Positions 2,531-63,777 of a stretch of 64,000 bases of DNA are shown piece after piece. Each line of letters opens with the position of its first letter. Within the stretch, counting starts at the first letter, position 1. Source of the stretch: Mytilus californianus (taxonomy: Eukaryota). A model generated the notes under the pieces. That model had not been told where the DNA came from. It searched no databases and was given only the letters and a program-made list of their open reading frames with translations. The stretch lies in NCBI RefSeq assembly GCF_021869535.1, contig NW_026262581.1:48546001-48610000 (forward strand). Reading direction: 5' to 3'. Both the position numbers and the translations under genes were made by a program.

Positions 2531-5015
2531 TAATAACTTAGTGTTCAAAGTCGGGATTTCGGTGATATCTTGTTCATCGTGTGTATCCATTAGACGGCCT
2601 TCTTCTACAAATCATATGAAAATAAACTGTTGCACAGTATTTGTTCGATGGACAATCAACATCGCGATGACAGTCTTTTTTGCAACCAATTGCTCAACTC
2701 ACTGCTGACTGAGAAATGACTCTTGAACCAGAAGTTCTTACTGATCCACTACGTCTTAACGAAACAGTGTCTAATACATCTAGCCCACTTCGTCTAGAGG
2801 TAATTGCGTCAAGAATATCCTAACCTGTATGACCAGATATTGCATGGCTACTACCTATAGTTTTCAAATAAATGAATTGCAAGATAGGTCTAAATTTCTA
2901 GCCAGACCGGATGAACCAATTCTGCTGCCAGAGGATGAATGACCATCATTACTTGAACCTCTGGGCAAGCCAGATGATGAACTTCTAATTATTTCTGAGA
3001 CTGTGTTTCCCCTTCTTATAAAGTCTGACAATCCAGATGCACCAATTCTACTTCCAGAAGAAATGTCGACGCAGTAACTTCTACAACCATCATGGACACA
3101 TTTATGGCCTGAACGACATAATTTATATCCTCCGCACCCATAATGACAATTACTGATACTGTCATCGTCAGATATAGCACGGGACATACCAGCTGAAGAA
3201 CCTCTAATGATTTCAGATACAGAGTTCCTGCCTCCAACAGAACCCCCAGACAATACTCTACTGGCTGATGACCCATGTGTTATAAATTCATTGCCTATTC
3301 CATGGGATGTTCCAACAGCTCTTGATCCTGTTCGTCTATTTGCATTAATTACATCCAGTAAAGAAAGAGATCCGCCACGACGCCCGTTTATGTCTCTTCC
3401 AACTGTGTTTCCGACCTGTAAATCCTTCTCCACTGCGTGTACATCTAATGCATGCTTTTTCGTGGGTGCATAGACTGTAAAATTAAATATCTGACAATTT
3501 TATAATCTTCACAAATCAAGTAAAAAAACTATACAGATGAACTACTATCTATCTATATATATAAGATTGTCTAGTATTATTGATAATAAGACAACAATCC
3601 ACCATTAACCAGATGACAATAATGTAAACAACTGCTGGAACCATACGGTTTCAGCACTGAGCGAAAGCCATACATTATAGTAAGCTATAATGGACCCACA
3701 CGATAAAATGTGAAACAATTCAAAGCACAATACCATTCGTTTTTCTATAATAATTTACAAAATATGTATATGTTGGTAATATACCTTCTTATGTACTAAT
3801 TATATAAATTAATATCTTTTTGGTGATTTGTCCACGATAAGGTGTTTAGTTCTAATCATCGCACCGAAGACATTTTTGTTAAAACAGCCTATAAATCTTG
3901 AGAAAGCAAAGCGAATATTTTCTTACCGGCTACTGCCAATGTGGTCAACGCCATCGAAAAGAAAATGGTCTGGAATCTCATCATCTCTAAGAATTCTGAA
4001 ATTTACAGGATACACATTATTTCTTACAAAAACATTTCAAACTTTAGGATTTATTGAGCTTGTAATCGAGCTATAGGTTGTGCAAAATTAAGATATTGTG
4101 TAGGGATTATACATGTGGAAGTCATTATCACGTGATTGAAAAGAAATATTGAAGTCCATAAGTTTTGATATAAAAAAAAGTATTTGATGACCGCTATTTT
4201 ATAATTCATTCTGAAAATAGAAGACTAACTAGGGAAAGAAAATTATATATCAAAAACAAACTAAAGGTGACATTGAGTCCTTAACCATCACATAAACGGT
4301 ACCAATATTCATGCACCAGAAGCGCATTTCGACAATTAAGGTCTGTTCAGTGATGCTCGAGGCATATTTGAAAAAATCCTAAATGGAATACTGCTGTTGA
4401 AGAGCTAATTAAACCAAACAGAACTTGAAGTATAGCAAAATATGCAGAGCGAATCAGAGCAATATATCATGAAATATAAAACACAATGTGAGATTTGGTT
4501 AAAACTACAAATCAGAAAGCTATGTTAGATATTGATTTACAATTTAACAAATGAGGAAAAAGGGATTGAAGCTAATTGTTAATCTCGAACTTGCATCACT
4601 TACATCGATTTTCAAATCTAAGTATAAATAATCATTCAATTTTACAGCAAATAATATTTAGAAACGCACATTACTTTGTATGTATATCATTTTCAATGTT
4701 TCAAATAATTATTTCAGGCGGATTTGCAATTCCGATTTATAAAAAAAAAGCTTTGTTGCCAATAAATATTACTTTGAAGCAGTATTTCTTACCCTTTACT
4801 TATTTAAATCAGTACACAAATGTATAACAATGCACAACGCTTAAATCTTAATAAATCCTATTTCTAATTCCTTAATGTTAATGATTTATTTCCTGTTATC
4901 TTTTCACAATTGCATTATTATTGCTTTGTATATATATCATATTTATTTATGATAAATATTTATGTTAAATAATTTCTTACCTTTGATTGAAGCAATTGGG
5001 AAGATTTCTTATTAA

Positions 5016-5289
5016 ATAAACTCATCATAGATACCAGGATTGAAATTTTGTATTTGCGCCAGACGCGCGTTTCGTCTACAAAATACTCATCAGTGACGCT
5101 CGAATAAAAAAAAGTTAAAAAGGCCAAATAAAGTACGAAGTTGAAGAGCATTGAGGACATAAAATTCATAAAAGTTTTGCCAAATACAGCTAAAGTAATC
5201 TATTGTTTGAGGTAGAAAAGCCATAGTATTTCAAAAATGTAAAGTTTTGTAAACAGTTAATTTATAATTATGACCATATCAATTAATTA
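5016..5289 (-). mobile_element. Retrozyme-like non-autonomous retroelement (family A) with 7-bp TSD
   Basis: 274 bp flanked by TTATTAA at 5009-5015 and 5290-5296. It is absent from exon 1 of G2-G6 and carries a hammerhead motif. Related, mostly degenerate or truncated pieces lie near 7128, 9969, 11405-11522, 16395, 29215, 39475, 45125 and 58875. Several share the end ctggtatctatgatgagtttat. Confidence 0.8.
5057..5098 (-). ncRNA. Minimal type I hammerhead ribozyme
   Basis: Minus strand: CGUCA CUGAUGA GUAU-UUUGU-AGAC GAAA C-GCGC-GUC^UGGCG. Both core boxes are intact. Stem I is CGUCA/UGGCG, stem II has one A.G mismatch, and stem III is short with a palindromic GCGC loop. Predicted cleavage is between 5062 and 5061. 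Confidence 0.82.
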
Positions 5290-5322
5290 TTATTAATATT
5301 GTTTTACTGCTTCAGAATCGTT

Positions 5323-5330
5323 CTTTTATA
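5323..5330 (-). promoter_or_regulatory. TATA box of G1
   Basis: TATAAAAG at the same position as in G2-G6, 30 nt upstream of the inferred TSS (~5300). Confidence 0.7.
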
Positions 5331-6684
5331 CAGTTTTTAATTATTTGTTTATAATTGACATGTATACAAGGAAATTTGTAACTGAACCGCAAATGATAAA
5401 TTCGTTAATTATTGTTGAAACTTTAAATGTCACGATGTCGTAGTACAACAACATTGCAGATTATGCCTATCTAAAGAAATGTATTAAGGGTCAATAAACA
5501 CATTTTGTTTCCTCCTACACTAGACATAATATTCATGACATCATAATACATTTTTATATTATGAAAAATTGCCTCCACGGATAAGATGTTTTTAATTAAA
5601 TGCATTTGGTAGTCGCCACAGACTTGTAAAGTTTAAAAAAAAACTCTAGTCTTTTATTTCCTTATAAAAGATATAGTTTGTTTAGAATTGTCAAGAAATC
5701 TCTGTTTGAAAGTTAATTCACCTGACGATAGAAAAGTTATAAGGATTTTAATCTGAAGCGGATGACTCGCCATTTGTCTGTATAAGATTCACTAGTCATG
5801 ATCGAATCTAAACAGTAGAATGGGCAAATAAATAAAGAATTTAAAGATAAACCAAAAGCTCAAAATTAGTTGGGTCAAGATGTGCAATTCAGTTTAGGTA
5901 GGCAACAATGGTTACCTTTTTTTCTTTCCTCTGTCCATATCGTAAACCTGGATATGTATGATTGCTCTTTTAAAAGCTGAGACATTTTCACTTATGTGGT
6001 TAATTCTTTAGTGTACGAAGTGGGAATAATGTTTTCACAAATTGGAAAACCCAGAAAGGCCCCATGTTATTCGTCTTCATCATGTAAAAAGTTCCTATTT
6101 GCACATAGCAAAATTCTTTGGAAATTCAGTTCGTTTCAAATATTTTAAAATAACTCCAAAGTGTTCACATCTTTATTATACAGTCATCGGCTCTTCAATA
6201 AAGCATAAATGTTTCAGCTTACAAAAAATATCCAATATCATTCAATACAGCTTTTCCATTTCTCTTTATAATTGAGTTCTTCAGTTTGAGGCGCATTAGT
6301 GATATTGCCCCAGTTGCGTCAAGTCTGGCGAATGCCATATTTGTCTTGTGATAGAAAACAGTATGCGGTATGGGTTTTGTCCAAGGCAGTACGGTGACCT
6401 ATAATTGTTAACCTTTATGTCATTTTGTCTAGTGGAAAGCTGTCTCATTGGCAATCATACCACATATTTTTTTTTTTAAATCAAAACCAAACTGTCTTTA
6501 ACCTAAAATTATTGAGAGCTTGATATATCATGTGGGGATATGTCTATTGTCGAAGACTAGATGTTACCTTAATTATGTCTTTTGGTTTTTGTTGTCGTTG
6601 GATTGCTATCTCAACATTAAACCCAAAAATATACGTCAAAAAAATACGTCACTTTTTATGGCGTTGATACATTGTTGCGTTTAT

Positions 6685-11961: not shown

Positions 11962-13340
11962 TCATCGTGTGTATCCATTGGACGGCCTTCTTCGACAAAT
12001 CATGTGACAATTAACAGTTGCACAGTATTTGTTTGTTGGACAATCTCCATCACGATGACATTCCTTTTTGCAACCAGTTTTTCCTCCTACCATTGACTGA
12101 GAAACTACTCCTGAACCTGAAGAACTAACTGATCCACTTCGTCTTAAGGAAACTGTGTCTAATACATCTAGCCCACTTCGTCTAGAGGTAATTGCGTCAA
12201 GAATATCCGAACCTGTATGACCAGATATTGCACGGCTTTTACCAATAGTTTCCAAATGAGAATTGCTAGATAGGTCCAAATTTCTAGCCAGACCGGATGA
12301 ACCAATTCTGCTGCCAGAGGATAAATGTCCATCATTACTTGAAACTCTGGTCAAGCCAGATGATGAACCTCTAATTATTTCTGAGACTGTGTTTCCCCTT
12401 CTTATAGAGTCCGACAATCCAGATGCACCAATTCTACTTCCAGAAGAAATATCGACGCAGTAACTGCTACAACCATCATGTACACATTTATGGCCTGAAC
12501 GACATAATTTGTCACCTCCACACCCATAATGGCACTTACTGATACTGTCATCGTCAGATAAAGCACGGGACATACCAACTGAAGAACCTCTAATGATTTC
12601 AGATACAGAGGTCCTGTCTCCAACAGAACCCCCAGATAGTCCTCTTCTTCCTGATGACCCGCGTGTTATAAATTCATTGCCTATTCCATGGGATGTTCCA
12701 ACAGCTCTTGATCCTGTTCGTCTATTTGCATCAATTACATCCAGTACTGAAAGGGATCCGCCACCACGAAGCCCGTGTATGTTTCTTCCAACTGTGTTTT
12801 CGGCCTGTAAAACCTTTTTCACTCCATGTATATCTAATGCGTGCTTGTCTGTTGGTGAATAGGCTGTAAAATTAAATAGACAATCTTGTTATCTTCAGAA
12901 AACAAGAAATAACGATATCTAGTATCATTGCCAATAAGACAATATTGCCAATTAAAGGACGAGGTTGTTAACAATTGCAAGAGCTTTCGGTTTCAGCACT
13001 GAACAAATCCCATACTGTATAGCAAGCTATAAAAGACCCCCCCCCCCATGATAAAATGTTTAACAGTCAATACACTAAACCAATCGTTTTGATCTTTGTC
13101 ATTATAATTTAAAAAACTATACAGATGCTGGCAATATACTTTCATATAATTATGTACGAAATTTATCTATGTTTAAGAACATTTTGGCGGTAAGACATTT
13201 GGATTTTATCTACATATCGAAAAACACTTTTGTTAAACACAGCTTATGAATTTCTAGAAATAAAATCGAATATTTTCTTTACCGAATACTGTCATTGTGG
13301 TCAATGCCGTCAAAAAGAATATGGTCTGGAATCTCATCAT
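11962..13340 (-). CDS. G2: secreted Ser/Gly/Arg-rich protein with two 6-Cys WAP-like modules (~319 aa)
   Basis: Coding exon 2 is 13340-13283 (MMRFQTIFFLTALTTMTVF, phase-1 GTAAAG donor). Exon 3 is 12863-11962 (after ttacag, TGA stop) and open throughout. ATTAAA at 11898-11903. Confidence 0.88.
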
Positions 13341-14934
13341 CTCTTGAAATTCTGAAATTTAAAGGATAAAAATCATTTCTAAGAAAAAAAAAACTTCACA
13401 CATTTAATCTTAATACGAATCAGTAGATAGCAAAATAGTGCTTGCTTTTACTATACACCTGCAAGACAGTTAAATTTTGTAAACAATACTCATCGAGGCT
13501 TATATTACTTTGGGGGATATAAAATTTCATACTGAGCCAAAATGTAGATTGTATTGTAACTGGTTATTCAAACATGAGGTATTGTGTAAGGATTATACCC
13601 GAAGAAGGCATGTGAATAAAAAAATGTCTGAAAGTCGATAGAATATTGAAATGAATATTTAAAGACAACAATATATAATGCATTTTGAAACTAGAAAACA
13701 AAGTAAGAAAATATGGAAAGGATGTCTATATTTCGGCCGTTTTTATCTTTTCTAAGGGATATCTTCGAAATAAGAAAAGAGAAAACTAAACCGAATGTGG
13801 ACAATGTGTCCTTAATAAAAGCACGAATGGCACCAATACCGATGCACCAGATGCGCATGTTGACAATTAATGTCTCTTAAGTGATAATCGATGCAAAAAT
13901 ATTTCAGAATAAAAAATGTTAAACTAGCTTTGAAATGCTGAATAAAAAAGAAACTAAAGTATAGCCAAATCTTGGGGAAGGAAGCAGAGCAATAAATCGT
14001 AAAAATCAAGCTTTAATCTTAACACTATTTGATTTTTCAAGCTTCAATTTTTAACACTATTTGATATTTCAGAGAGATTAGGTTGAAATTACAATATAGA
14101 AAGATATGTTAGATATCGATCCGCAAATTAACAAATAAAGAAAAGGGGATTGAAGCAAAATATAAATCTCGAACTTGCATAACATTCATTGATTGTCAAG
14201 TTTAGTATGAAATAGACATTTACTTTTTACAGTATTTAAACTTCAGAAAGGAACATAACTTTGTATATTTATTCCGATAGACTTAAAAACACAGCAGCGA
14301 AAATCAGTTGTGCTAATAAATAATACTTTGATGCAGTACTTTGTTACTGTATCGTACACTAAATTACTTAGATCAATACAAAAATTTTGAACTATGCACA
14401 ACGCTTTAGCCTTTATAAATCATTTATCTTAAATCTTTTTGTGTCATTCTTTGTAAGAATCATCCAATTTTGAAAAAAATAAAAACATGGCAGAAAAAAA
14501 CCCACCGACTTAACCATTCTATTTTGAAGTTACCCTCATCCTGAGTTAGAAATGGTAGATCTTTAATTTCTGCGTGTCTGGTAAGTCAAGAAATTTCTAA
14601 ATAACTTTTGGTTAGAATGATAGTAAAATACGGACTTAGCTCCACTTAATTGTTAATTTCTAGTGCATTTCAATCAATTTATATCTTGAATTATCAAAAT
14701 TGGAAAAGGAAAAGAATGTTATATTTGTGCACCATTATACATTTTGAACATGAATTAATGTCAACTTGAGTGGGTTTTTGTTTGTCATGTTTTCACCACT
14801 GCCCGATTCTTAGGCAGATTGGCACTTAAAATGACTTATTTCTTGTCTTTGTTACTATTGAATTATTTATGTTTTGTATATTTATCATATTTATTTATAA
14901 TAATAGCTATGATTAAGCTTCGATAATTTCTTAC

Positions 14935-15003
14935 CTTTGTTTCTAGCAATTGGAATTATTTCTAATGAATAGTGTTTTACTGCTTCCGAATCGTCCTTTT
15001 ATA
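14935..15003 (-). promoter_or_regulatory. G2 TATA box and 39-nt non-coding exon 1
   Basis: TATAAAAG 14996-15003, inferred TSS ~14973, exon ends ...AAACAAAG|GTAAG at 14935. The geometry matches G3-G6. Confidence 0.75.
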
Positions 15004-15896
15004 CTGACTTCAATTATTTGGTTTATCATAGACATGTGCACAAGGAAATTTGTAAGTGAACCGCAAATGATGAATTCGTTAAATTTAGTTTAAACTTTAA
15101 ATGTCACGTTCTCGTTGTACTAATAAATTGCAGATTACATAAAGAAATGTACCAAGGATCAATAACAAATTTTGTTTCCTCGTACATCATATATATTTTC
15201 CATTACATCATAATACATGTAGGTATTATGAAATATTTCTTTCACCTATTGGTAATATTCTCAAAGAAACGCATTATATATTTGGTAGAAGCCAGAGACT
15301 TGTACAGTTTAGAAAAAATTATATGAACTGAAGTCGTTTATTTCCTTATAGACGGTATTATTTTTCGTTGAATTGTTTGGAAAACTACTGCATGATAATT
15401 ATTTAAGTTGACGTTGGAAAACTTATCTTAGTTATAAGAATTTCAATCTAAAACGTCAGACTCGCAATCTATCTGCACATGATTCACTAGTCTTGTTCGA
15501 AGCAAAACAGGGCTCAATGCAAAATTAATTACGAATTTAAAGAGAATGAAAACCAAGAATTCCTCAAAAAATTGCGTCAAATCTGGCTACTGTCAACTTT
15601 GTCTTTGGGTAACATTTTTTTGTGAAATGTAAACTTTCATACAGTAATCTTTTATCTCAACAAAGGTAAGATGATTACTGGTCAGATGGGACAAAACGTC
15701 TTCCAGCAGTGGTTTCGACCCAGGTGTGGTAAAATTCAGCGACACGATGAATATGTAGTTGTCACGGGTTCTCCCGCGCTTCAGATATTGTTTGCAATAA
15801 GAACAAAATACTTTTCTAACTTTAACCAACTCTCTTTATCCTTTCAAGACGACTAAGAGCTTAAAATAAAGTGTGGGCACCTGTCTGTAGTCTAAG

Positions 15897-22095: not shown

Positions 22096-23452
22096 TTATC
22101 CTCGTGTGTATCCATTAGATGGCCTTCTTCGACAAATCATGTGACAATTAACAGTTGCACAGTATTTGTTGCTTGGACAATCTCTATCAGCAAGACAGTC
22201 TTTTTTACAACTAATTTTCCCATTTAATACTGACTGGGAAACGACTCCTGAACCAGAAGTACGTACTGATCCACCACGTCTTAAAGAAACTGTGTCTAAT
22301 ACATCAAGTCCACTTCTTCTAAGGTTGGTTGCGTCAAGCATATCAGACCCTGTATGACCAGACATTGCACGGCTTCTACCTTTAGTTTCCAAATGAGCAT
22401 TGCTAGATAGGTCCAAATTTCTAGCCAGACCTGATGAACCAATTATGCTGCCAGAGGATAAATGACCATCATTACTTGAAACTCTGGTTAAACCAGATGA
22501 TAAACTTCTAATTATTTCCCTCCTTATAGAGTCCGACAATCCAGATGCACCAATTATACTTCCAGAAGAAATTTCAACGCAGTAGCTGCTACATCCATTA
22601 TGAATACATTTATGTCCTGATCGACACAATTTATCTCCTCCACACCCATAATGACAGTTACTGATACTGTCATCGTCAGATAAAGCACGTGACATACCAA
22701 CTGAGGAGCCTCTAATGATTTCAGATACAGATGTCCTGCCTCCAACAGAACCCCCAGACAATCTCGTACTGCCGGATAACCCACGTATTATAAATTCGTT
22801 TCCTATTCCATGAGATGTTCCAACTGCTCTTGATCCTGCTCGTCTATTTGCATCAATATGATCTAGTACTGAAAGAGATCCGCTACCACGACGCCCGTTT
22901 ATAGCTCTTCCAGATGTGTTTTCGACCTGTAAAATCTTCTTCACTCCATGAATGTCTAATGCATGCTTTTCTGTTGGTGCGTAGGCTGTAAGATTAAATA
23001 TATAATAATCTTTACAATCTTCACAATACAAGTAATACAAAAAAAAAATATAGGTGAACTACTATCTTTATATCTGCCAATAAGACAACTAATGGATGAT
23101 ATAAACAATTGCAGTGACCTTACGGTTTCAGTCGTAAGCAAAGTGCATACCACATATTAAGCTATAAATGAACCCACATAACAAAATGGGAAACAAATCA
23201 AAATTCAAGAGCATTCTTTTCAAACTTTTACATTGTAATTCACAAAAAATATGTAGACGTTGGTAATAATATTTTTTATGTACTTTAGTTATATATTTTT
23301 TTTTTACTTTTCTGCAGTAAGGTATTTATCTCAACATCGAAAACACTTTCGTTAAAACAGCCTATAAATCTAGAAAAAAGCAACATTTTCTTACCGGCTA
23401 CTATCATTGTGGTCACTGCCATCGATAAGAATGTGGTCTGGAATCTCATCAT
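22096..23452 (-). CDS. G3: same family (~315 aa)
   Basis: Coding exon 2 is 23452-23395 (MMRFQTTFLSMAVTTMIVA, GTAAG). Exon 3 is 22985-22096 with a TAA stop. The ancestral TGA has become GGA, adding one Gly. AATAAA at 22052-22057. Confidence 0.88.
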
Positions 23453-43213: not shown

Positions 43214-44166
43214 TTCAAAGAATTCTGAAATTAACAGGATAACATCATTTCTATGAAAATAAAAATTCACACATTTAATTTTAATACGAATCATTTAATA
43301 GTAAAACTGTGTTTGATTTTTCTATACATTTGCAAGACAGTAAAATTTTAAAAACTATACTTTTCGAGGCTAATATTTTCTTTGGGAGGTATATAAAATG
43401 ACAGAAGGATGATACATGAAGAAGGCATGTGACTTAAGATAAATCTGAAAGTCGATAGAATTTTGAAATGAACATTTGAAGACAGCCTTTATTAAATGCA
43501 CTCTAAAAATAGAAAATAGAAAACAATTTGAGAAACGAAGGGAAGGTGCCTATATTTCGACCGTTATGATATTTTCTAAGGGATATCTTCGAAATAAGAA
43601 AACAGAATACCAAACTGAATGTGAAGAGTGTGTCCTACATGTAAATAAAATTATAAGAGGTACCAGTATTCATGCAACAGATGCGTATGTCGACTATTAA
43701 TGTCTTATTAGTGTTTCTCGAAGCAATATTTCAATATTCAAAGTGTTATACTGGGGTTGAAGAGCTAAATAAAAAGGAAATCAATTTACAGACAAATCTG
43801 GGGAAAAATTCAGAGCAATAAATCGTATAAATCAAGCTTCAATCTATACCACAACTTTATTTTTCAGAGAGATTAGGTTGATATTACAAAATAGAAAGAT
43901 ATATAAGTTATCGATTCACGAATTAACATTCAAAGAAAAGGGGATCGAAGCAAATTATTCATCTCGAACTTGCATAACATTCATTGATTGTCAAGTCTTA
44001 GTATGAAATAGACATTTACTTTTTACAGTATTTAAACCCTACAGACTGGAACATAACTTCGTATATTTATTATTGCTTATCTATCAAACAGTTATTTCAG
44101 TCAGATTATCTATTCCGATAGATTCTAAAACAGAGAAAATCTGTTTAATATTTAATAATTTCTTAC

Positions 44167-44235
44167 CTTTGTTTCTATCAATTGGAATTATTTCTAATGA
44201 ATAGTGTTTTACTGCTAACAAATCGTCCTTTTATA
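44167..44235 (-). promoter_or_regulatory. G5 TATA box and non-coding exon 1
   Basis: TATAAAAG 44228-44235, inferred TSS ~44205, donor GTAAG after 44167. Confidence 0.75.
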
Positions 44236-50059: not shown

Positions 50060-51240
50060 TCATTGTGTGTATCCATTAGACGGCCTTCTTCTACACATCA
50101 TGTGACAGTTAACAGTTGCACAGTATTTGTTGGTTGGACAATCTCCATCAGCAAAACACTCTTTTTTACAACCAACTTTTCAACTTACTACTGACTGGGA
50201 AACGACCCCTGAACCACACATACATACTGATCCACTACGTCTTATCGAAACTTTGTCTAATACACCAATAGATATAAGAAGATGTGGTATGAGTGCCAAT
50301 GAGACAACTCTCCATCCAAGTCAAAATTTATAAAAGTAAACCATTATAGGTCACAGTACGGTCTTCAACACGGAGCCTTAGCTCACACCGAAAAGTAAGC
50401 TATAAAGGGCCCACAAAAAATTACTAGTGTAAAACCATTCAAACGGGAAAACCAACGGTCTAATCTTTATATAAAAAACGAGAAACGAGAAACACTTATG
50501 AACCACATCAACAAACGACAACTACTGAACATCAGATTCCTGACTTAGGACAGGTGCAAACAGATGCAGCGGGTTTAAACGTTTTAATGGTACCAAACCT
50601 TCACCCTTTTTCTGAAACAATAGTGTAACATCACAACATAGAAAGACACACTATAAAATATCAAATGAAATAGCTTAACTCAATCAAAGGACATATTAAC
50701 ACCATTGAACATACACTGAACAAATAAATTTGACCTATGACACAATGTAAATACAAAATAAATAAACTAAGGGAAGAATAATAAAAGTAACATATTATAT
50801 CGGTAAGAAATGTTTAACAATTAAAGAAAAACAATATGCTCGAACAAAAATATCAGCCATCAAGTCCACTTCTTCTAAGGTAGGTTGCGTCAAGAATATA
50901 AGAACCTACATGACCATACATTCCTCGGCTTCTACCTATAGTTTTCGAATGAGAACTGCTAGATAGGACGAAATTTCTAGCCAGACCAGACGAACCAATT
51001 CTCCTGCAAGAGGATAACTGATCATCATTACTTGAAACTCTGGTGAAACCAGATGATAAACTTCTAATTATTTCCCTTCTTATAGAGTCGGACAATCCAG
51101 ATGCACCAATTATACATGTTATACTTCCAGAAGAAATTTCAACGCAGTAGCTGCTACATCCATTGTGAATACATTTATGTCCTGAACGACACAATTCATG
51201 CTTTTCCGTTCGTACCATTTTACAATCTTTACAAATCAAG
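50060..51240 (-). pseudogene. Gf: broken G3-type exon 3 fragment
   Basis: 3' part 50265-50060, middle part 51198-50859, split by an insertion at 50266-50858. A deletion joins EKH directly to LCRSGHKC. The exon 3 acceptor is lost and no exon 2 or exon 1 follows upstream. Confidence 0.85.
50266..50858 (-). mobile_element. Family C insertion (~590 bp) in Gf exon 3
   Basis: It splits tctaataca|tcaagtcc and is colinear with 31900-32400. Confidence 0.8.
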
Positions 51241-51702: not shown

Positions 51703-53437
51703 ATTGGTTGTTTTGTTTATATACATTTCATTGTTTGACTCGTCTTTGATACTTTTTGAAGTAGTTTTACTTGTCATCTATCGTGTTTTTACGTTTGATT
51801 TGCCGTGGATTTCAACTTTTTTTCAAAAGTCCTTTTTGGCACAATTGCAGTGCAAACCGTGGGTACATTATAAAAGTTTAACAGTGATCGATGTAGACAG
51901 CAACAATGGTTGAAAACATCAATTTGTTATTTTGTAAGTGAGTGCTAAGCGAAAAGTCGATGTTTCAAATTTAATTTGTAAAAGTAACCATTAGTTTACC
52001 ATTGTTTCCGCCTTTGCCTACCTAACAAAGAGTGAGCAATGTGTTAGCTTTCAGAAAATGCACGAACTGAAAGTACATTCTACGTCATTTCAAGGAGAAT
52101 ACCATTCACCTAAGGACAGCGATGAAAGGATGAGTGTTAAGACCTTTTCGAGTTTGTTGGCATTGATTGGCCACGAATTAAAGTATGCAAAATACAAATT
52201 TCATTTCCGCTTGTTTAAAATATCTATTGTTGTTCTCCGTCATTTCCCCAATTGAACAAAATTTCTTTTTTTATATCCATAAAACCGTTTGATGATTGAG
52301 TTTTTTTAATCAATTACAAACTAAACACATAATCTTCACCATACTCATTGATATAAACCGATGGTTTTTTTTCAATACTTCATCATTAAATTTAATTTCA
52401 TGTTCTACAGCGAAATAGAACCAAAAAAAAGTCTCCTATACCATATAAATATAGAAGCACAGATAAACTGTGAAGTGTTATTTTTATTGTCATGCTATAA
52501 AAGACTAGCTGTATGTTTGCTTACAAATGTAATAATGGATACTCTTAAATTTCCATAAAAAAAATTTCGGTGAGGTCAGGTAGGTAGTTATCAAATATGG
52601 AACCTCGAAGAGGGCTTCTGGAACCCTTTTACCTGTCTATCAAATATAAAAATAAGAAGATGTGGCATGATTGCCAATGAGACAACTCTCCATCAGAGAC
52701 GTAATGATGTAGAAGTTGACAACTATAGGTCACCGAAAAACCTTCAACAATGATCAAAACCCATACCGCATAGTAAGATATAAATACTTCATATATATTT
52801 AAATATTAAGAACCGACCATAAAAGTGTACGTACATAAATTTACAAATAAACATAATATTTCCTGAGGTAAACTATTTTCGCAATTAAAATATATCCCAA
52901 AACTTCTTTCTATTACTCTATGACATTATTCTGGTTTCATGTATACCTATTTTTATAAACAAAGATTATTTGGTTAATGTCTTTGACTGATTCTGAGTTT
53001 TTTATGGGAATCTTTTGTTGCTCGATTTGCCTAGCTTTCATCACGTTTCCAGAATAAAAAAACTTTTAGTAGCTATTTCAGAATGCAAATCAATGTACAA
53101 CTTGTCAAGGCATTGTGTTTGCTTTGGCGTAAGTGTTTATATAGGCTTTGTTTTACATTTTTCTCATAGTTTATGTTATGATATTTTTTTTGAGTTAAGA
53201 GTAAACGGTATAAATACAAATCACCAAACTTTTTTCAATTGTTGTATTATTTTTATTATCTGTACTTATATCTTTGCGTTGTTTTAAATTTTCTGAGTAG
53301 GATTGCTTTGACGCCTAAATCATCAATATTTTGTATTGTAGAACGGAAAATATACAATTACATCAATTGAATGCAACATTTTATTTTATAAAAAAAATAA
53401 ATAAGTGTTGAAAGTCTGGATTTCGGTGATATACTGT

Positions 53438-54648
53438 TTATCGTGTGTATCCATTAGACGGCCTTCTTCGACAAATCATGTGACAATTAACAGTTGCACA
53501 GTATTTGTTGGTTGGACAATCTCCATCCGCAAGACACTCTTTTTTGCAACCAATTGCTCCAGTTACTACTGACTGAGAAACGACCCCTGAACCAGAAGTA
53601 CGTACTGATCCACCACGTCTTAAAGAAACTGTGTCTAATACATCAAGTCCACTTCGTCTAAGGTTGGTTGCGTCAAGAACATCAGAACCTGCATGACCAG
53701 ACATTCCACGACGTCTACCTATTGTTTCCAAATGATCATTGCTAGATAGTTCCAAATCCCTAGCCAGACCAGATGAACCAATTCTGCTGCCAGAGGATAA
53801 ATGACCATCATTACTTGAAACTCTGGTGAAACCAGATGATAAACTTCTAATTATTTCCCTTCTTATAGAGTCGGACAATCCAGATGCACCAATTATACTT
53901 CCAGAAGAAATTTCGACGCAGTAGCTGCTACATCCATTGTGAATACATTTATGTCCTGAACGACACAATTTATCTCCTCCACACCCATAATGACAGTTAC
54001 TGATACTCTCATCGTCAGAGAAAGCACGTGACATACCAGCTGAGGAGCCTCTTATGATTTCAGATACTGATGTCCTGCCTCCAACAGAACCCCCAGATAA
54101 TCTTCTACTGCCGGATGACCCACGTGTTATGAATTCGTTTCCTATTCCATGAGATGTTCCAACTGCTCCTGATCCTGCTCGTCTATTTGCATCAATAAGA
54201 TCTAGTACTGAAAGAGATCCGCTGCCACGACGCCCGTTTATAGCTCTTCCAGATGTATTTTCGACCTGTAAAATCTTCTTCACTCCATGAATGTCTACTG
54301 CATGCTTTTCTGTTGGTGAGTATGCTATAAGATTAAACATAGAATAATTTTTACAATCTTCACAGTACAAGTAATACAAAATACAATACAGGTTAACTAC
54401 TATCTTTATATCATTTTACTTTTACATTGTAATTCACAAAAAAATTGTAAATGTTGGTAATAATATTTCTTATGTACTTTAGTTATATATATTTTTTTTA
54501 ATTTTCTGCAGTAAGGTATTTATCTCAACATCGAAAATACTTTCGTTAAAACAGCCTATAAATCTCGAAAAAAAAGTAGCATTTTCTTACCGGCTACTAT
54601 CATTGTGGTCACTGCCATCGATAAGAAAATGGTCTGGAATCTCATCAT
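53438..54648 (-). CDS. G6: same family (~314 aa)
   Basis: Coding exon 2 is 54648-54591 (MMRFQTIFLSMAVTTMIVA). Exon 3 is 54324-53438 (acceptor ttatag, TAA stop). AATAAA at 53380-53385. Confidence 0.88.
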
Positions 54649-55835
54649 CTCTAAGAATTCTGAAATTAACAGGATGAACGTTGTTTCTCAGAAAATCATA
54701 ATTGACCTATTAAATACGAATCAGTTAACACAATCTTTATATTCATATTTACATGTTTTTACTATACATCTGCTAGAAACAATCTGCAGCGATATTTATA
54801 CATGTTTTGGGTATACAAAAATGACAGAATATCTTTATTCGAAGCCGAATTGTAGGATTTATTGTGCTTGCTTTCGAGCTATAAATTGTTCAAAATTGGA
54901 ATATTGTGTAAGGTTATATCTGGAAAAGCCGTTGTTATGTTAATTACAAAAACCTCACTGTCGTCAAAACTTTGAAATTTACTGATTGAAAACAGCTTTT
55001 ATAAAATTTATTCTGAAAATAGAAGACTCAATAGAAAAATATGGAAGGGGGTCTATATCTCGACTTTTATTGTTTAAAAACGGATATCTTTGAAAATTAA
55101 AACCGAAACAACAAACTCAATATGGACATTGTGACCTAAATATTTACAAGTCAGATGATCGATTCGACAATTAATGGATGTTCTGTGATTTTCAAGCCAA
55201 ACATATTTGAAAATCCACGATTTAATACCGGCCACGATGAGCTGATCATACAAAAAAAAATAGAGTATAACAACTTCTAGACAAGGAATTGGAGCAATTA
55301 ATCCTAAAATATAAATTTCAATTTATTATACAATATTAGACTCGGTTGACTTTAAAAGTTTGAAAAATATGATAAAAATAGTTTTACCAGTTAACAAATT
55401 TAAAAAGAAAAGGAATGAGGCAAAATATAAATCTCGAACTTCTATCACTTAAATTGATTTTCAATATCTCAAAAAATTAATTTGGTCTGGTTTTCATTTT
55501 CGATAGATTTTAAAAGGCAGTAAAAATAAGATGTGTTGCTAAAATATAGTTTGAAGCATTTTATGGTTATAATACTTTTTTCTTACTATTCTATTACAGA
55601 AATGTAAACAATGCACAACTTTCACTATACTATTCTTTATAAAAGTAAATTGAACTGTTTCGTTCTGCCAAGGGAGCAAATGCTTCTCTAGAAGTATCGA
55701 ATTATCCTAATGCTTTAAACTTAATAAATTCTAATTCTATAATGATTTATTTCCTACTATCTTTGTCACTATTGTATTATTGTTTTGTTTATTTATCATA
55801 TTTATTCATAATTAATTGTTACCTATAAGCCTTAC

Positions 55836-55904
55836 CTTTCTTTGAAGTTATTCGAAGGATTTCTTGTGAATACTGTTTCACTGCTTCAAAATCGTTCTTT
55901 TATA
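55836..55904 (-). promoter_or_regulatory. G6 TATA box and non-coding exon 1
   Basis: TATAAAAG 55897-55904, CAGT at 55874, donor GTAAG after 55836. Confidence 0.75.
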
Positions 55905-58900
55905 CCGTATCAAATATTTTGTTTATGATTGACATGCACACAAGAACATTTGTAACGAAACCGCAAATGATGAATTCGTTAATTATAGTTAAAAACTTTA
56001 AATGTCACGACGATGTCGTAGTACTACGAAATTACGGAGTATGCATATATCAGGATATGTACTAAGGTTCAATAACACATTTTGTTTCCTCCTACAACAA
56101 ACATATTTTTCATGACATCATAAACTTTAATGTCACCATGTCTTATTTCTATGAAATTGTGGATTATGTTTATTTTTTAAAATGTACTAAAGGTGAAAAA
56201 ATGTCCTACAACAGACATATTTGTCATTATGTAATAATACATGTAGTTATTACGAAATATCGTTTTGACTTTTTTGACAAATCTGGTTAAATATGCACGT
56301 TATTAATTTCGTTGTAATCAGAGACTTGTACTGTTGTAATAATAACTAACATAAAGCCTTTTATTTCCTCATGGTATGGACGTTATTCTTTAATAATTGA
56401 TTTGCTTGAAACCCATTGCTTGGTATTCTATTCAAATGCTGGGCAGGCCTAAATCGGGGATTTCGATGAAAAGATGACGGGAATGTTGTTACGACAATTG
56501 GTACACATCTGTAGTCATCTGAGAAACAGATAAAAATAAAACTTTATTCAAAATGAATAGTAAAAACAGTTTCTTAAATTACATTTAACGTAGTTGGAAA
56601 ATGTTTATATTTCTATTTAAAATCAGTCACCATTAGTTATAGGAAATCAAAATTGTTTTGAACGTGGGAACAACTAAAAAAAATTGTACTTCAAATAATA
56701 AAAAAATGAAATAAAACTATCGACTTTTTTTGCGTCCGAAGCGTTTTTATGAATTAAAATCAATCAGGATCGCTCAAAGCCAAAAGCCAGAATTTTAAAG
56801 AAGGATGTATAAATTCCGAACCTGGCTTATGAAGAGCTATACGACAAAATGGATCTAAAAGTGATATCCAAATCCTTCTAAGGTAAACTTTACTTGAAGA
56901 GTTTGAATCTTAGTTTCTTCATTGTCTTGAATGTATCAACAGAGAATTTATTAAAGATTTGTTATAAATCATGTCAGTACCGAAGTATTACAGAACTGAT
57001 AATGCCCTCTTGGACTACAATGACAACAGTTGTAGTATTGACCCAATGCTTGCAAAATGAAAATAACACTATCAATTTTTTGAGTCCAAACCGCTTTTCT
57101 AGATGGCATATGTTCTATATAAACTCAAATTTCAAATAACAAATATCTATAACACTATTCATGTATCTCTTTATATAGCAACGCTGGTGAAAAATCTTTA
57201 GACCTGGCTTGATTAAAATATTTTGTACTTCAAATTACTGTATTGAACATCTTCCTTTTCAGGCAATGGTCTAATTTGCATTGATCAGAAAAGAGGTTCA
57301 GAATTACAAGAATTGCATACACAAAACTTTGGCATAAAAGATTTACAGTTAATTCCCCCTTTTCAATGTTTCTTTAAAAGAAATTTCAAATTCATATGTA
57401 TATAAACGTAGATAAAACAATGAAATCAGTTAATTGTTTTATTTCAATTCTTGGAAGTGTTATTAGAAAAGAAAGAATAGGATTGACCTCTTGAAGACTG
57501 ATATTTTTTTTATCATTTCGGCTGTTTTATATGATAAATATTTTCAGCGTTTTCAAAATAATTAACCTCTCCCTATTTTAATATGCCTTTACCAATCATA
57601 TGGAAACCAACTTCTCTTCTTGCACAGTTGTTTCTTTAGTCATTTACGCCAGACTCCATACAGTACGTAGTTTAGAAAGAAAATGGAAAGAAGCCAAAGA
57701 TATCATTTATTTTCACAAATCGCTGTATAAGTGATGACCTCTCGCTCAATAATTGATTTCATAGTTTTCTGAACTGTTTTTGTGCTTTCTTCGATTTTTA
57801 TTTTTTTGCCATGATTTTGTTAGTTTTTCGTTTCCCCTATGGTATCTTCTGCATCTGCATCTTTTTGATTACTTCACACTGGGAACTGATTACTTTGAAT
57901 AGTTACTTGAAATATTGTGTATGATTATGGCAGCCATAACGCGCATCTTACCAACTTCTACGACTAACACAATATGCTGCATTGATGGTTTGATACTACT
58001 CAGTAAAAGGTAGATAACAGGAGGAGAACTCAAATTAATAAATTTTTTTTAGATCTGAATTCCTATCAGCATAATTCAAGAAAAAAATATGAAATGAAGC
58101 AAACTACCTTTTCACTAGTATATAATTTTTCAGGTGATATATGAGATATGAATATTCACTTAAATATAAAAGAAAATGCCAAGGATTTGACATAGAAATC
58201 GGCAGATTTTGTAATATGTATTTTTTTTATACTAATATACATGCTTATATACATGAGGGCAAGAACAAAGTGGCAACAGTTTCAGTTTCTTACTGGCCAA
58301 TATAATTCTTTTATCATATTTTGATATGCATATATTTTTTTCATTTTAAATGTTTCTATGTCAACTGAGTTTGAAAAAGATTGAAATGGTTCCGATTAAT
58401 ACATCTTTGATTTAAGGGTTGTTGTAATTGGGAACAGTAGCAAAATTATAAGAAAAGGAACTCAGGAAAACAGGTTGAAAATCAAGAGCTGTTCTCTATT
58501 TGTTATCCTTTTTTCCCAAACAAAAATGAATTTCCCCTTAATTTATGTATTGAGTTAGCTATTCGTCGGTGACTAATACGGCGATTCTTATTTACCAAAA
58601 TTATCAGTCCTTTGGCTTCGGTTTGACCATTCATAGCATTGGAAACAGATACTGTAGGGAAAGCTGAGCTAATATGAATTAAACGGTTTTATAGATAACA
58701 GTTTGCTCAAGTGTTGCGTTTGAAAAGACATGGCTTAAAGGAAAGCGGTGCTTTAGTTTAAAAAATATTACACTGTGTAAATTAGGTACAGGCATGTAAA
58801 CATGATATCGGATATATCGGTTTTTTTTTACAAAAATGACGTAAAAACCCGAAAAATATACCAGGTTAGTGATTTTGCACACCAGATTCGTGTTTCGTCT

Positions 58901-60643: not shown

Positions 60644-62153
60644 ATAAGTGAGTGCTTATTAAAAAGTCGATGTTTGAAATTATTTTTTTAAAGCAACCAT
60701 TAACCATTATTTCTGTCTTTGACTACCAAACAAAGATCGGCTAATGTGCTGGCTTTCAGAAAATGCACGAACTTAAAGTATATTCTACGTAATTTCAAGG
60801 AGAATACCATTCACCTAAGGACAACGATGAAAGGTTGAGTGTTAAGACCTTTTCGAGTTTGTTGGTATTGATTGGCCACGAATTTAAGTATGAAAAAATA
60901 CAAATTTCATTTCCGCTTGTATAAAATATCTATTGTTGTTCTCATTTGAACAAAAATTTTTTTTTTTTTATATCCATAAAACCGTTTGATGATTGAGTTT
61001 TTTTTTCTCAATTATAGACTAAGCACACAATCTTCACCATACTCATTGATATAAATCGGTTGTTTTTTTTTTTTGAATACTTCAACATTAAATCTGATTT
61101 CATGTTCTACAGCGAAATAGAACAAGAATAGTCTCCTATACTATATCAATATATTAGCACAGATAAACTGTGAAGTGTTTTTTTGTCATGTTATAAAAGA
61201 CTAGCTGTATGTTTGCTTACAAATGTAATAATGGATACTCTGAAATTTTCATAAAAAAGTTTTCGGATGAGGTAAGGTAGTAATCAAATATGGAACCTCG
61301 AAGAGGGCTTCCAAAACCCTTTCAGCTGTCTATTAGATATAAAAATAAGAAGATGTTGCATGATTGCCAATGAGACAACTCACCATCAGAGACGTAATGA
61401 TGTGAAAGTTGATAACTATAGGTCAGCAAACGACCTTCAACAATGATTAATACCCATACCGCATAGTAAGCTATAAATACTTCATATATCTTTAAATATT
61501 CAGGACCGACCATATAAATGTACATATATAAATTTACAAACAAACTTAATATTTCCTGAGGTAAACTATTTTTGCTATTAAAACATATCCTTAAACTTCT
61601 TTCCGTGACATTATTCTGGTTTCATGTATACCTATTTTAATAAACAAATTTTTTGGATTATGTCATTCACTGATTCTGTTTTCTTATAGTAAATCTTTAG
61701 TTGTCCGATTTGCCTAACTTTCAGCACGTATCCAGATTTAAAAAGTTCCAAAATATTAATACTTTTAGTAGTTATTTTAGAATGCAAATAAATGTAGAAC
61801 TTTCCAAGGCATTGTGTTTGCTTTGGCAAATATAGTTTATAGATTTTGCTCTACAATTTTTCTAATTGTTTATGGTATGTATGTTTTTGTGTTAAGAGCA
61901 AATGTGTAAATGGTATTAATTGAAATCACCAAACTCTTTTTCAATTGATATCTTATTTCTCTTATCTGTATTAATATCCTTTCGTTGTTTCACTTTTTCT
62001 GAGTAGGATTGCTTTCACGCCTAAATAATCAATATTTTGTATTGTAGTATAGAAATTTATACAATAACACAAACTGAATGAAACATTTTATTTTATAAAA
62101 AAAAAAAAAAATAAGTGTTCAACGTCTGGATTTTGGTGATATTCTGTACATGT

Positions 62154-63777
62154 TCATCGTGTGTATCCATTAGACGGCCTTCTTCGACAAATCATGTGAC
62201 AATTAACAGTTGCACAGTATTTGTTCGTTGGACAATCTCCATCACGATGACACTCTTTTTTGCAACCAATTGATCCACTTACTACTGACTGAGAAACGAC
62301 CCCTGAACCAGAAGTACGTACTGATCCACCACGTCTTAATGAAACTGTGTCTAATACATCAAGTCCACTTCGTCTAAGGTTGGTTGCGTCAAGAATATCA
62401 GAACCTGTATGACCAGATATTCCACGACTTCTACCTATTGTTTCCAAATGAGAATTGCTAGATAGGCCCAAATCCCTGGCCAGACCAGATGAACCAATTC
62501 TGCTGCCAGAGGATAAATGACCATCATTACTCGAAACTCTGGTCAAGCCAGATGACACACTTCTAACTATTTCCCTTCTTATAGAATCCGACAATCCAGA
62601 TGCACCAATTATACTTCCAGAAGAAATTTCGACGCAGTAGCTGCTACAACCATTGTGAATACATTTATGTCCTGAACGACATAATTTATCTCCTCCACAC
62701 CCATAATGACAGTTACTGATACTGTCATCGTCAGATAAAGCACGTGAAATACCAGCTGAGGAGCCTCTAATAATTTCAGTTACAGATGTCCTGCCTCCAA
62801 TAGAACCCCCAGACAATCCTCTACTAGCTGATGACCCGCGTGATAAAAAGTCATTGCCTATTCCATGAGATGTTCCAACTGCTCTTGATCCTGCTCGTCT
62901 GTTTGCATCAATTACATCCAGTACAGAAAGAGATCCAACACCACTACGCCCGTTTATGTCTCTCCCAACTGTGTTTTCGACCTGTAAAATCTTCTTCGCT
63001 CCATGTTTGTCTAATGCATGCTTTTCTGTTGGTGAATAGGCTGTAAGAATAAACATAGAATAGTTTTTACAATATTCACAAATCAAGTAATAAAAAATAC
63101 AATACAGGTGAATTACTATCTGCATATGAATATCAGGATATATGTAGTTATTGCAAATAAGACAACTATTCACCATACACCAAAGGATGGTGTAAACTTG
63201 TAAAACCTTCTTCACTCCATTTATATCTAATGCATGCTTTTCAATGGGTACATAGACTGTAAAATTAAATATCTCACAATTTATATAATCTTTATCAATC
63301 AAGTAATACCATTAACAATACAGGTTAACTAACATTTATATATTTATATAAGGATACTTGGTATAATTGTCAAAAAGACAATTATCCACCATAGACAAAA
63401 AGGCGAGGTTGTAAACAGTTGCAGGTACCGTTCGGTTTCAGCACTGAGCAAAACCCATACCTTATCGTTATCTATTAAAAGACCCCCATGATAAAATTAG
63501 AAACAATTCAAAACACAAAACCATTTGTTTCAAATTTGTTTCATTATAATTTACAGAATATGCAGATGTTGGTAATATGCCTTCATATAATTATGTACGA
63601 AAGTTATCTATGTTTAAGAAGATTTCGGCGATAAGAAATTTAGATTTTATCTACACATTGATAAAACTTTGTTAAACAGCTTATAAATTTTGAAATGGCA
63701 AATCAAATATCTTTCTTACCGGCTACTGTCATTGTGGTCAATGCCATCAACAAGAATATGGTCTGGAACCTCATCAT
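62154..63777 (-). CDS. G7: same family, near-identical to G5; exon 1 lies beyond the window
   Basis: Offset exactly 20564 bp from G5. Coding exon 2 is 63777-63720. Exon 3 starts at 63040 or 63256 and runs to TGA 62154-62156. AATAAA at 62087-62092. Confidence 0.85.

What the first reader, a model, noticed from the sequence alone, without database searches (positions are those of the whole stretch)
2574..63777. Tandem array of an apparently unnamed secreted Ser/Gly/Arg-rich family, hidden from the ORF track by splicing
Seen: 8 loci, a 58-nt signal-peptide coding exon and a 39-nt non-coding exon conserved across copies, with GT-AG sites and phase kept. Six copies have open CDS. The architecture is signal peptide, low-complexity Ser/Gly/Arg spacer, Cys module, spacer, Cys module. 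Established: mollusc shell and byssus proteins such as lustrin A and perlwapin combine Gly/Ser-rich tracts and/or WAP domains. Inference: this is a birth-and-death array of extracellular matrix, coating or defence proteins. I cannot name an ortholog.
Basis: partly seen in the sequence, partly recalled or inferred. Interest (0 to 1): 0.75.

Follow-up and report, generated by a model that had tools for sequence, protein, structure and literature searches.

The report
Amplified mussel mini-WAP secreted protein genes
The window holds eight tandem copies (six intact) of a California-mussel gene for a secreted, basic, mostly disordered protein carrying two cut-down WAP disulfide knots; the family is real, expressed and hugely amplified, but it is already annotated (uncharacterised) in public mussel genomes and its function is still unknown.

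Summary
Eight minus-strand copies recur every 8-11 kb. Six have an open main exon, one is frameshifted, and one is a 5'-truncated fragment split by a repeat. Each full copy has a TATA promoter, a short non-coding exon, a signal-peptide exon (58 coding nt, phase 1) and a main exon of about 887 nt, with GT-AG kept.

The window is Mytilus californianus chromosome C1:48,546,001-48,610,000. It is only part of a roughly 470-kb array with at least 35 open genes. RefSeq already models these genes with the same splice: copy 2 is XP_052082931 and copy 5 is XP_052082945. UniProt labels relatives 'WAP domain-containing'.

Both six-Cys modules are WAP domains lacking exactly C1 and C6, which form one disulfide. 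The array's terminal gene still has a canonical eight-Cys WAP. Solved structures closest to the models are omwaprin, SLPI and elafin. The long protease-binding loop is absent.

The 'spacers' are predicted disordered but are under purifying selection (dN/dS 0.40). One run covers only the main exon, at very high depth and with a poly(A) tail. A raw RNA run shows none.

Function is untested. My best guess is a bulk-secreted cationic coating or defence protein. The scan reached the same reading on a neighbouring window of this array.

The parts
2574..3473 (-). Copy 1 main exon, broken: open through the internal module, then frame lost with several stops
3927..3995 (-). Copy 1 exon 2 (signal peptide; 58 coding nt within core 3928-3985)
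5277..5395 (-). Copy 1 promoter/exon 1 block; the exon 1 donor is lost and unrelated sequence follows
11962..12863 (-). Copy 2 main exon, open; equals RefSeq XP_052082931 (LOC127720382)
13283..13351 (-). Copy 2 exon 2 (signal peptide)
14928..15069 (-). Copy 2 TATA promoter and non-coding exon 1
22096..22985 (-). Copy 3 main exon, open
23395..23463 (-). Copy 3 exon 2 (signal peptide)
24626..24763 (-). Copy 3 TATA promoter and exon 1
33177..34063 (-). Copy 4 main exon, open
34501..34569 (-). Copy 4 exon 2 (signal peptide)
35743..35880 (-). Copy 4 TATA promoter and exon 1
41590..42476 (-). Copy 5 main exon, open; equals RefSeq XP_052082945 (LOC127720407). Internal mini-WAP module at about 42052-42171, C-terminal module at about 41605-41724
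43156..43224 (-). Copy 5 exon 2 (10 nt 5' UTR plus 58 coding nt plus phase-1 G)
44160..44300 (-). Copy 5 promoter block: TATA box at about 44227-44235, inferred exon 1 at about 44167-44205
50060..51199 (-). Copy 6: 5'-truncated pseudogene in two pieces (50060-50268 and 50858-51199), split by a high-copy repeat; no signal-peptide exon
53367..54324 (-). Copy 7 main exon with 3' UTR: stop at 53438-53440, AATAAA about 15 nt before the poly(A) site at 53367
54591..54659 (-). Copy 7 exon 2 (signal peptide)
55831..55969 (-). Copy 7 TATA promoter and exon 1
62154..63040 (-). Copy 8 main exon, open; 99.1% identical to copy 5 over 2.4 kb
63720..63788 (-). Copy 8 exon 2 (signal peptide); its promoter/exon 1 lies about 720 nt past the window end

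Best explanation
Shown: the window is a 64-kb slice of a roughly 470-kb tandem array on a Mytilus californianus chromosome. The array is built from three-exon genes: a non-coding exon 1 behind a TATA box, a signal-peptide exon, and one large exon. It grew by duplication of multi-gene blocks and has shed pseudogenes along the way. Each gene encodes a secreted protein of about 30 kDa and pI 9.2-9.7. The chain is predicted to be mostly disordered and is rich in Ser, Gly and Arg. It carries two small knots, each a WAP domain that has lost exactly the C1-C6 disulfide. The array's terminal gene keeps a canonical eight-Cys WAP plus seven such modules, so the window's genes are trimmed versions of a beads-on-a-string WAP protein. 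Transcripts are polyadenylated and extremely abundant in one sample and absent from others.

Inferred: the many near-identical copies under purifying selection serve high output of a bulk extracellular product. This would be a cationic coating or defence protein of a secretion (mucus, byssus or shell surface, or haemolymph). Its mini-WAP knots would act as stable binding or membrane-active heads of the omwaprin/crustin type, not as canonical elafin/SLPI-type protease inhibitors, because the long inhibitory loop and the C1 segment are missing.
For: Array and gene model. RefSeq proteins identical to the exon translations, with the same copy's signal peptide in front. Organism: contig length 142,435,203 equals the NCBI M. 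californianus chromosome. WAP derivation: Pfam WAP 23.2 bits against a cutoff of 20.8, on profile positions 11-39; 43 of 54 family members hit WAP; the terminal gene scores 51.7 bits and its N-terminal domain covers profile 1-41; the alignment shows C1 and C6 missing in every module. Fold: AF2 gives pLDDT 85-88 for the C-terminal module and 79 for the internal module alone. Top Foldseek and VIA hits are omwaprin, half-SLPI and elafin. The module profile's best PDB sequence is omwaprin, E 6e-4, aligned C2 to C8; elafin aligns only from C3. Disorder and charge. Selection: dN/dS 0.35 overall, 0.08 on the internal module, 0.34 on the C-terminal module, 0.40 on the spacers. Block duplication. Expression: run X1 covers only the main exon (word depth up to 18,477), shows nothing in intron or intergenic DNA, and has a poly(A) loose end at 53367 behind AATAAA. 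Sister runs X22 and X23 hold none of its words.
Against: No tissue, proteome or assay links the protein to any secretion or activity. The sample identity of X1 is coded, and X1 is only guessed to be RNA. The raw RNA run X21 (6% read) gave zero depth on the main exon. No read-level exon 2-exon 3 junction was seen; the joint table was filled by repeat joints. Immune effector families of mussels usually diversify, whereas these modules are conserved. The protein lacks the Tyr/DOPA, His or acidic signatures of known byssal or shell matrix proteins. Structural scores are weak in absolute terms (Z 2.6-3.5, Foldseek E at least 0.14) because the modules are only about 30 residues long.
Confidence: 0.6

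Rival explanations
1. Canonical WAP-type serine-protease inhibitor that protects a secreted material (byssus, shell matrix) or tissue from proteolysis.
For: WAP superfamily membership. Half-SLPI and elafin are among the top structural hits. In other mytilids, WAP-like genes are foot- and mantle-specific and are interpreted as inhibitors (PMC5549309; PMC7971044).
Against: The modules lack C1 and the segment before C2, and they have a 3-residue C2-C3 stretch where elafin and SLPI carry the long binding loop. Elafin aligns only from C3 onward, while the non-inhibitory omwaprin aligns from C2. No assay exists.
Confidence: 0.15
2. Polyprotein precursor: the chain is cut at conserved dibasic sites into several peptides, two of which carry a mini-WAP knot.
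For: Four RR sites in the spacers are kept in 20 of 20 paralogues, each behind a recurring (S/G)-x-LD-type motif. R47, R223, R235 and R236 are at least 90% conserved across species. Similar LD...RR motifs recur in the distant relatives.
Against: Arg is 10% of the protein, so RR pairs are not rare. There are no typical KR or Gly-amidation signals. The conservation fits any functional linear motif. There are no peptide data.
Confidence: 0.15
3. Shell or periostracum matrix protein acting on calcium carbonate growth, in the manner proposed for perlwapin and lustrin A.
For: Gly/Ser-rich tracts plus WAP-type modules resemble those proteins. WAP domains occur in Mytilus shell proteomes and in genes upregulated during shell repair (PMC5854119; PMC8194122).
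Against: The protein is basic (pI 9.2-9.7), with only one short acidic patch. No sequence search returned lustrin, perlwapin or any named shell protein. Those papers do not identify this family.
Confidence: 0.1

Closest known systems
Omwaprin / snake waprins (single WAP-domain antibacterial proteins; PDB 3ngg)
   Same: Best structural and PDB-sequence match of both modules. Same short C2-x3-C3 spacing, same acidic xxDxDC stretch, cationic character.
   Different: Waprins are about 50-residue single domains with all four disulfides and a functional N-terminal segment. Here the C1-C6 disulfide and that segment are missing, and the modules sit in a 30-kDa disordered chain.
Type II crustins of crustaceans (signal peptide, Gly-rich region, Cys-rich region, C-terminal WAP)
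   Same: The overall plan of a low-complexity Gly-rich stretch followed by a C-terminal WAP-type knot in a secreted cationic protein (plan of crustins as summarised in PMC10608444).
   Different: Crustins carry a 12-Cys C-terminal region with a full eight-Cys WAP. No sequence relationship beyond the WAP superfamily was found. Different phylum.
Lustrin A and perlwapin (gastropod nacre proteins)
   Same: Modular secreted mollusc proteins that combine Gly/Ser-rich tracts and/or WAP-type domains. The multi-module terminal gene of this array has a comparable beads-on-a-string look.
   Different: No detectable sequence match in any search. Perlwapin has canonical eight-Cys WAP domains, and lustrin's repeated Cys modules are a different type. 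This family is basic and has not been shown to be in shell.
Elafin / SLPI (canonical inhibitory WAP domains)
   Same: Shared fold core from C3 to C8.
   Different: Four disulfides and a long C2-C3 protease-binding loop, both absent here.
RefSeq/UniProt predicted proteins of Mytilus spp. (e.g. XP_052082945, XP_052082931, 'hornerin-like' XP_052082407, 'mucin-21-like' XP_071157844, UniProt 'WAP domain-containing protein')
   Same: These are the same genes or their orthologues and paralogues.
   Different: They are automatic predictions with no functional characterisation. Some models have odd 3' ends.

Membership tests
WAP four-disulfide core domain (Pfam PF00095) | Profile score at or above the curated gathering cutoff (20.8 bits) | tested here: met
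   Whole main exon 19.6-24.1 bits across four copies. C-terminal module alone 21.5 bits. Internal module alone 18.0 bits, below the cutoff. 43 of 54 family members match. The array's terminal gene scores 51.7 bits.
WAP four-disulfide core domain (Pfam PF00095) | Eight cysteines forming four disulfides (C1-C6, C2-C7, C3-C5, C4-C8; connectivity from established knowledge of elafin and SLPI) | tested here: not met
   Both modules of the window's genes have six Cys with spacing C-x3-C-x5-C-x5-C-x4-C-x3-C. Alignment to the array's own canonical WAP shows that C1 and C6 are absent. They are therefore WAP-derived, not canonical WAP domains.
WAP four-disulfide core domain (Pfam PF00095) | WAP fold (central beta-hairpin inside a disulfide-braced loop) | tested here: inconclusive
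   The models show a beta-hairpin. For the C-terminal module, WAP structures rank first by both Foldseek and VIA. For the internal module, VIA ranks them first, while Foldseek puts a starfish peptide (KASH2) first and omwaprin second. Scores are weak throughout (Z 2.6-3.5, E at least 0.14), and knottin toxins score nearly as well for the internal module.
Inhibitory WAP (elafin/SLPI type) | Extended protease-binding loop around and after C2 | tested here: not met
   The C2-C3 stretch is 3 residues. The elafin alignment starts only at C3, and there is no C1 segment.
Inhibitory WAP (elafin/SLPI type) | Measured protease inhibition | not testable with these tools
   Needs recombinant protein and enzyme assays.
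Crustins (type II) | C-terminal 12-Cys region containing a full eight-Cys WAP, preceded by a Gly-rich region | tested here: not met
   The C-terminal module has six Cys. A Gly/Ser-rich region is present.
Lustrin A / perlwapin shell proteins | Detectable sequence similarity, or presence in shell matrix | tested here: not met
   No such protein appears among the 65 word-search hits or the 18 profile hits out of 1.84 billion representatives. Presence in shell was not testable.
Mussel foot proteins mfp-16 to mfp-19 (Cys-rich cuticle-gland proteins of M. californianus) | Sequence identity to the published mfp sequences; high Cys content | tested here: inconclusive
   No cluster member carries a foot-protein name, and Cys is only about 4%. 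The mfp sequences themselves were not on hand, so a direct comparison was not done. The description comes from 10.1101/837146.

The most novel reading that the evidence does not exclude
The family is the main protein of a so far uncharacterised mussel secretion. It would be a new kind of extracellular material or defence protein, in which a conserved, disordered Arg/Ser/Gly chain (possibly processed at its invariant RR sites) is capped by three-disulfide mini-WAP knots. Its output would be scaled up by a 470-kb gene array that is specific to mytilid mussels.
Probability: 0.2. Interest if true: 0.6.

Novelty: new variant of a known kind. Interest (0 to 1): 0.4.

Why it matters
Mussels are models for underwater materials and for innate immunity built on expanded, variable effector gene families. 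Here is a gene family of at least 35 open copies in 470 kb that is extremely abundant in one sample, and no publication I could find describes it. It is therefore a concrete gap in both fields. The three-disulfide mini-WAP module, with its canonical ancestor preserved in the same array, also gives a clean natural case of how a disulfide-rich domain is simplified and multiplied. If the protein proves to be a major component of byssus, mucus or shell surface, or a new antimicrobial type, it would be of practical interest. If not, it is one more lineage-specific expansion.

Tried and rejected
(1) PDB sequence search with the whole main exon found only chance hits.
(2) ESM Atlas gave no usable hit.
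(3) Raw RNA run X21 gave zero depth on the copy 7 main exon with 6% of the run read. Its reads fell only on transposon-like repeats, so there is no junction evidence.
C1:48.78-48.98 Mb is therefore known only from the match table.
(6) Seven literature searches found no description of this family and no paper citing member accessions.
(7) The joined (spliced) protein was deliberately not built or searched. Exons were searched separately by reference, and the join was checked only by substring comparison with RefSeq proteins. The 19-residue signal-peptide exon is too short for the search tools, and no SignalP is available. Its signal-peptide nature rests on the n-region/hydrophobic core/small-residue pattern read.
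(8) A mucin reading suggested by automatic names ('mucin-21-like', 'hornerin-like') was rejected as unsupported: Pro is 1% and Thr 4%.
(9) Pervasive positive selection was rejected on average dN/dS. Site-level tests were not run.
Full report
OBSERVATION. A repeat search finds eight copies of a unit longer than 1 kb, all in the same orientation, at spacings of 9388, 10137, 11078, 8413, 8470, 3378 and 8716 nt. The genes lie on the minus strand. Six copies have a main exon that is open from its acceptor to the stop, with stops at 11962, 22096, 33177, 41590, 53438 and 62154. Copy 1 (2574-3473) stays open through the first Cys module and then loses its frame. Copy 6 consists of two fragments (50060-50268 and 50858-51199) separated by a high-copy repeat, and it lacks the 5' third and the signal-peptide exon.

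Seven signal-peptide exons are present. Each has a tttcag| acceptor, 10 nt of 5' UTR, 58 coding nt (19 codons plus one base) and a G|gtaag donor. The main exon begins after (t)tacag or ttatag with the two bases that complete an Ala codon, so the reading phase is kept in every copy.

About 1.0-1.6 kb further upstream, six copies share a block with a TATA box (GTATAAAAG). Roughly 30 nt after the TATA box a short exon begins, and it ends AAAG|GTAAG. Copy 1 has lost that donor. Copy 8's block lies just beyond the window end. The 39-nt length of exon 1 rests on the TATA position rather than on reads. The main exon is not hidden from an ORF list; only the signal peptide is.

WHERE IT IS AND HOW BIG. 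The window is C1:48,546,001-48,610,000 of a 1.65-Gb assembly. The contig length, 142,435,203, equals that of the NCBI Mytilus californianus chromosome that carries the closest database proteins.

A six-frame search of the whole genome finds the family only between C1:48,524,915 and 48,994,744, a span of about 470 kb:
- 24 full-length open main exons of the window's type;
- four copies with stops, plus several fragments;
- a second block of about ten genes with two internal modules;
- one gene with a 759-aa open frame.

In the 280 kb I could fetch, the order main exon, signal-peptide exon, promoter recurs at about 20 loci. The array grew by duplicating multi-gene blocks. The stretch holding window copies 6-7 recurs 20 kb away at 98.0% identity over 10.9 kb. 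A block of 36-40 kb (one pseudogene plus three or four genes) occurs three times at 94-98.6%. Copies 5 and 8 are 99.1% identical over 2.4 kb. The CDS tree shows several gene types interleaved along the array.

IT IS ALREADY ANNOTATED. The word-based protein search returns 65 proteins. All named ones are from Mytilus (californianus, coruscus, galloprovincialis, edulis, trossulus). NCBI calls them 'uncharacterized protein LOC...' and UniProt calls them 'WAP domain-containing protein'.

By substring comparison, without building a joined sequence, the copy 2 main exon is contained exactly in XP_052082931 and the copy 5 main exon exactly in XP_052082945. In both cases it is preceded by that copy's own signal-peptide exon translation plus Ala. 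This is the best support I have for the exon 2-exon 3 junction.

No cluster member carries a functional name. Seven literature searches found no description of the family and no paper citing member accessions.

A profile search of 1.84 billion representative proteins gives only 18 hits at E of 0.001 or lower. The distant hits are unnamed transcript-sized contigs with the same plan: a canonical WAP, Ser/Gly stretches, an internal six-Cys module, and a C-terminal six-Cys module ending ...NGY. One metagenome protein is made of nine six-Cys modules with identical spacing.

WHAT THE PROTEIN IS. The mature chain is about 294 residues, 30 kDa and pI 9.2-9.7. It is 18% Ser, 15% Gly, 10% Arg and 4% Cys, has almost no aromatic residues and 1% Pro.

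Both Cys modules have the spacing C-x3-C-x5-C-x5-C-x4-C-x3-C. Pfam WAP matches the whole exon at 19.6-24.1 bits against a cutoff of 20.8, but only over profile positions 11-39 of 41. It matches 43 of 54 family members. On their own, the C-terminal module scores 21.5 bits and the internal module 18.0 bits.

The array's terminal gene (RefSeq 'hornerin-like' XP_052082407) opens with a full eight-Cys WAP covering profile positions 1-41. Seven internal six-Cys modules follow at a period of about 74 residues, and then the same C-terminal module (51.7 bits). Aligning all modules to that canonical domain shows that they keep C2, C3, C4, C5, C7 and C8 and lack C1 and C6. In the established WAP connectivity, C1 and C6 form one disulfide. 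The modules are therefore WAP domains minus one bridge, and the window's genes are trimmed versions of a beads-on-a-string WAP protein.

AlphaFold2 on the family alignment predicts the two modules as beta-hairpin knots (pLDDT 85-88 for the C-terminal module, 64-72 for the internal one, and 79 when the internal module is folded alone). Everything else is predicted disordered at pLDDT 31-36.

For the C-terminal module, Foldseek's first hits are omwaprin (rmsd 1.2-1.7 A over 31-34 residues, 35% identity), elafin-type peptides and half-SLPI. VIA, which does not depend on Foldseek, ranks half-SLPI, omwaprin and elafin first among 48,161 chains, at Z 3.3-3.5. For the internal module the same proteins lead in VIA at Z 2.6, but knottin toxins are tied with them. 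Absolute scores are low, as expected for domains of about 30 residues.

The module profile's best PDB sequence is omwaprin (E 6e-4), aligned from C2 to C8 with the same C2-x3-C3 spacing. Elafin aligns only from C3, because its C2-C3 stretch is the long protease-binding loop. The modules therefore lack the canonical inhibitory loop as well as the C1 segment.

THE SPACERS ARE NOT FILLER. Across the 20 open copies I could fetch, Nei-Gojobori dN/dS is 0.35 overall. It is 0.08 for the internal module, 0.34 for the C-terminal module and 0.40 for the spacers, at a mean dS of 0.17. Main exons are 84-90% identical between copies whose introns are 70-77% identical.

Across species, several spacer residues are invariant or at least 90% conserved, including a ...SRIGSSGLAR... 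stretch. Four RR pairs, each behind an LD-containing motif, are kept in 20 of 20 paralogues. AF2 sees no fold in these regions. I read them as conserved linear motifs in a disordered chain.

EXPRESSION. The raw RNA run X21 (same organism label, 6% of the run read) gives zero depth on the copy 7 main exon. A handful of its reads fall in the bins holding exon 1 and exon 2, too few to interpret. Its many other reads fall on transposon-like repeats.

Run X1 is only guessed to be RNA and is held as contigs. It covers just 53250-54249, with word depths of 1784, 18477, 3022, 3160 and 547 per 200-nt bin. It shows nothing in the intron (54450-55850) or the upstream intergenic DNA. It has a loose end of ten T before 53367, which is a poly(A) tail on the minus strand, lying about 15 nt after an AATAAA. 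So X1 behaves as RNA, and the family is among its most abundant transcripts.

Two runs from the same study hold none of the gene's words, which points to sample-specific expression. Sample identities are coded, so the tissue is unknown. The joint table was filled by repeat joints from the DNA run, so I could not read an exon 2-exon 3 joint directly.

HOW IT MOST LIKELY WORKS.
Shown: secretion signal; two disulfide-stabilised WAP-derived knots on a conserved, disordered, cationic chain; very high, sample-specific, polyadenylated expression; amplification of near-identical copies under purifying selection.

Inferred: many similar copies serve bulk output of an extracellular product. The knots are of the short-loop, omwaprin-like type and so are more likely binding or membrane-active heads than canonical protease inhibitors. 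The overall plan recalls type II crustins (a Gly-rich region followed by a C-terminal WAP). I put about 0.85 on the identity statement and about 0.4 on the coating/defence function, and I give 0.6 for the combined statement.

Rivals:
- a true protease inhibitor protecting byssus or shell matrix (0.15);
- a precursor cut at the conserved RR sites (0.15);
- a perlwapin/lustrin-like shell matrix protein (0.10).
None can be excluded without tissue, proteome or assay data.

COMPARISON AND NOVELTY. The family belongs to the WAP superfamily by descent but fails the defining eight-Cys criterion, so I file it as WAP-derived and not as canonical WAP. It is not a crustin, waprin, perlwapin or lustrin by sequence.

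Its existence is already recorded in RefSeq and UniProt. What is not recorded is the three-disulfide module, the link to a canonical ancestor in the same array, the scale and block structure of the array, and any function. The scan reached the same reading on a neighbouring window of this array (notes s1-302540 and s1-302646). That is a repeat, not independent support. I rate it a new variant of a known kind, with interest 0.4.

PROCEDURAL NOTES. The window has no N.

Noticed in passing
window 42632-42836 and 63196-63400 (copies 5 and 8); also C1:48631814, 48690185, 48725782, 48779421: A roughly 205-216-nt duplicate of the main exon's acceptor region and first 60 nt sits inside intron 2 of six array copies, at 74% identity to the real exon start. 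It runs in frame into the main-exon ORF, but the RefSeq proteins do not include it.
   Followed up: partly
window 61611-61628, 41045-41062, 52926-52943, 31381-31398 (minus strand): A tiny conserved exon encoding YMKPE-stop lies about 0.5 kb (1.8 kb for copy 4) downstream of four copies. RefSeq XP_052085273 (copy 8) reaches it from a strong internal donor (TCA|GTACGT) just before the C-terminal module, which would give an isoform lacking that module. No read support could be checked.
   Followed up: partly
window 44087-44137 (minus strand): The last 17 residues of RefSeq XP_052085192 (otherwise copy 7) are encoded here, about 9 kb downstream inside copy 5's intron 1. This looks like a chimeric read-through gene model.
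   Followed up: partly
window 5056-5099 (minus strand): Hammerhead type I ribozyme match at 29.8 bits (gathering 34), E 2.9e-5 in a 701-nt search. It sits in the sequence that replaces copy 1's exon 1 donor. There was no Rfam hit at gathering level anywhere in the window.
   Followed up: partly
window 50250-50850, 51450-51850, 52650-52850: High-copy repeats: word depth reaches millions in DNA contigs of run X17, and the repeats are transcribed on both strands in RNA run X21. One of them splits pseudogene copy 6.
   Followed up: no
L022:2762-5038 (C1:48,992,762-48,995,038, minus strand): Terminal gene of the array, a 759-aa open frame: a canonical eight-Cys WAP, seven internal six-Cys modules and the C-terminal module. 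RefSeq calls it 'hornerin-like'.
   Followed up: yes
protein P0098 (ENA/JGI metagenome contigs, 494 aa): A protein of unknown organism made of nine six-Cys modules with the same C-x3-C-x5-C-x5-C-x4-C-x3-C spacing. The mini-WAP module may therefore exist outside mussels.
   Followed up: no
L023 (C1:49,005,926-49,006,483, minus strand): Just beyond the array there is a 186-aa open frame with 16 Cys in CC/GCC clusters, unrelated to the family.
   Followed up: no
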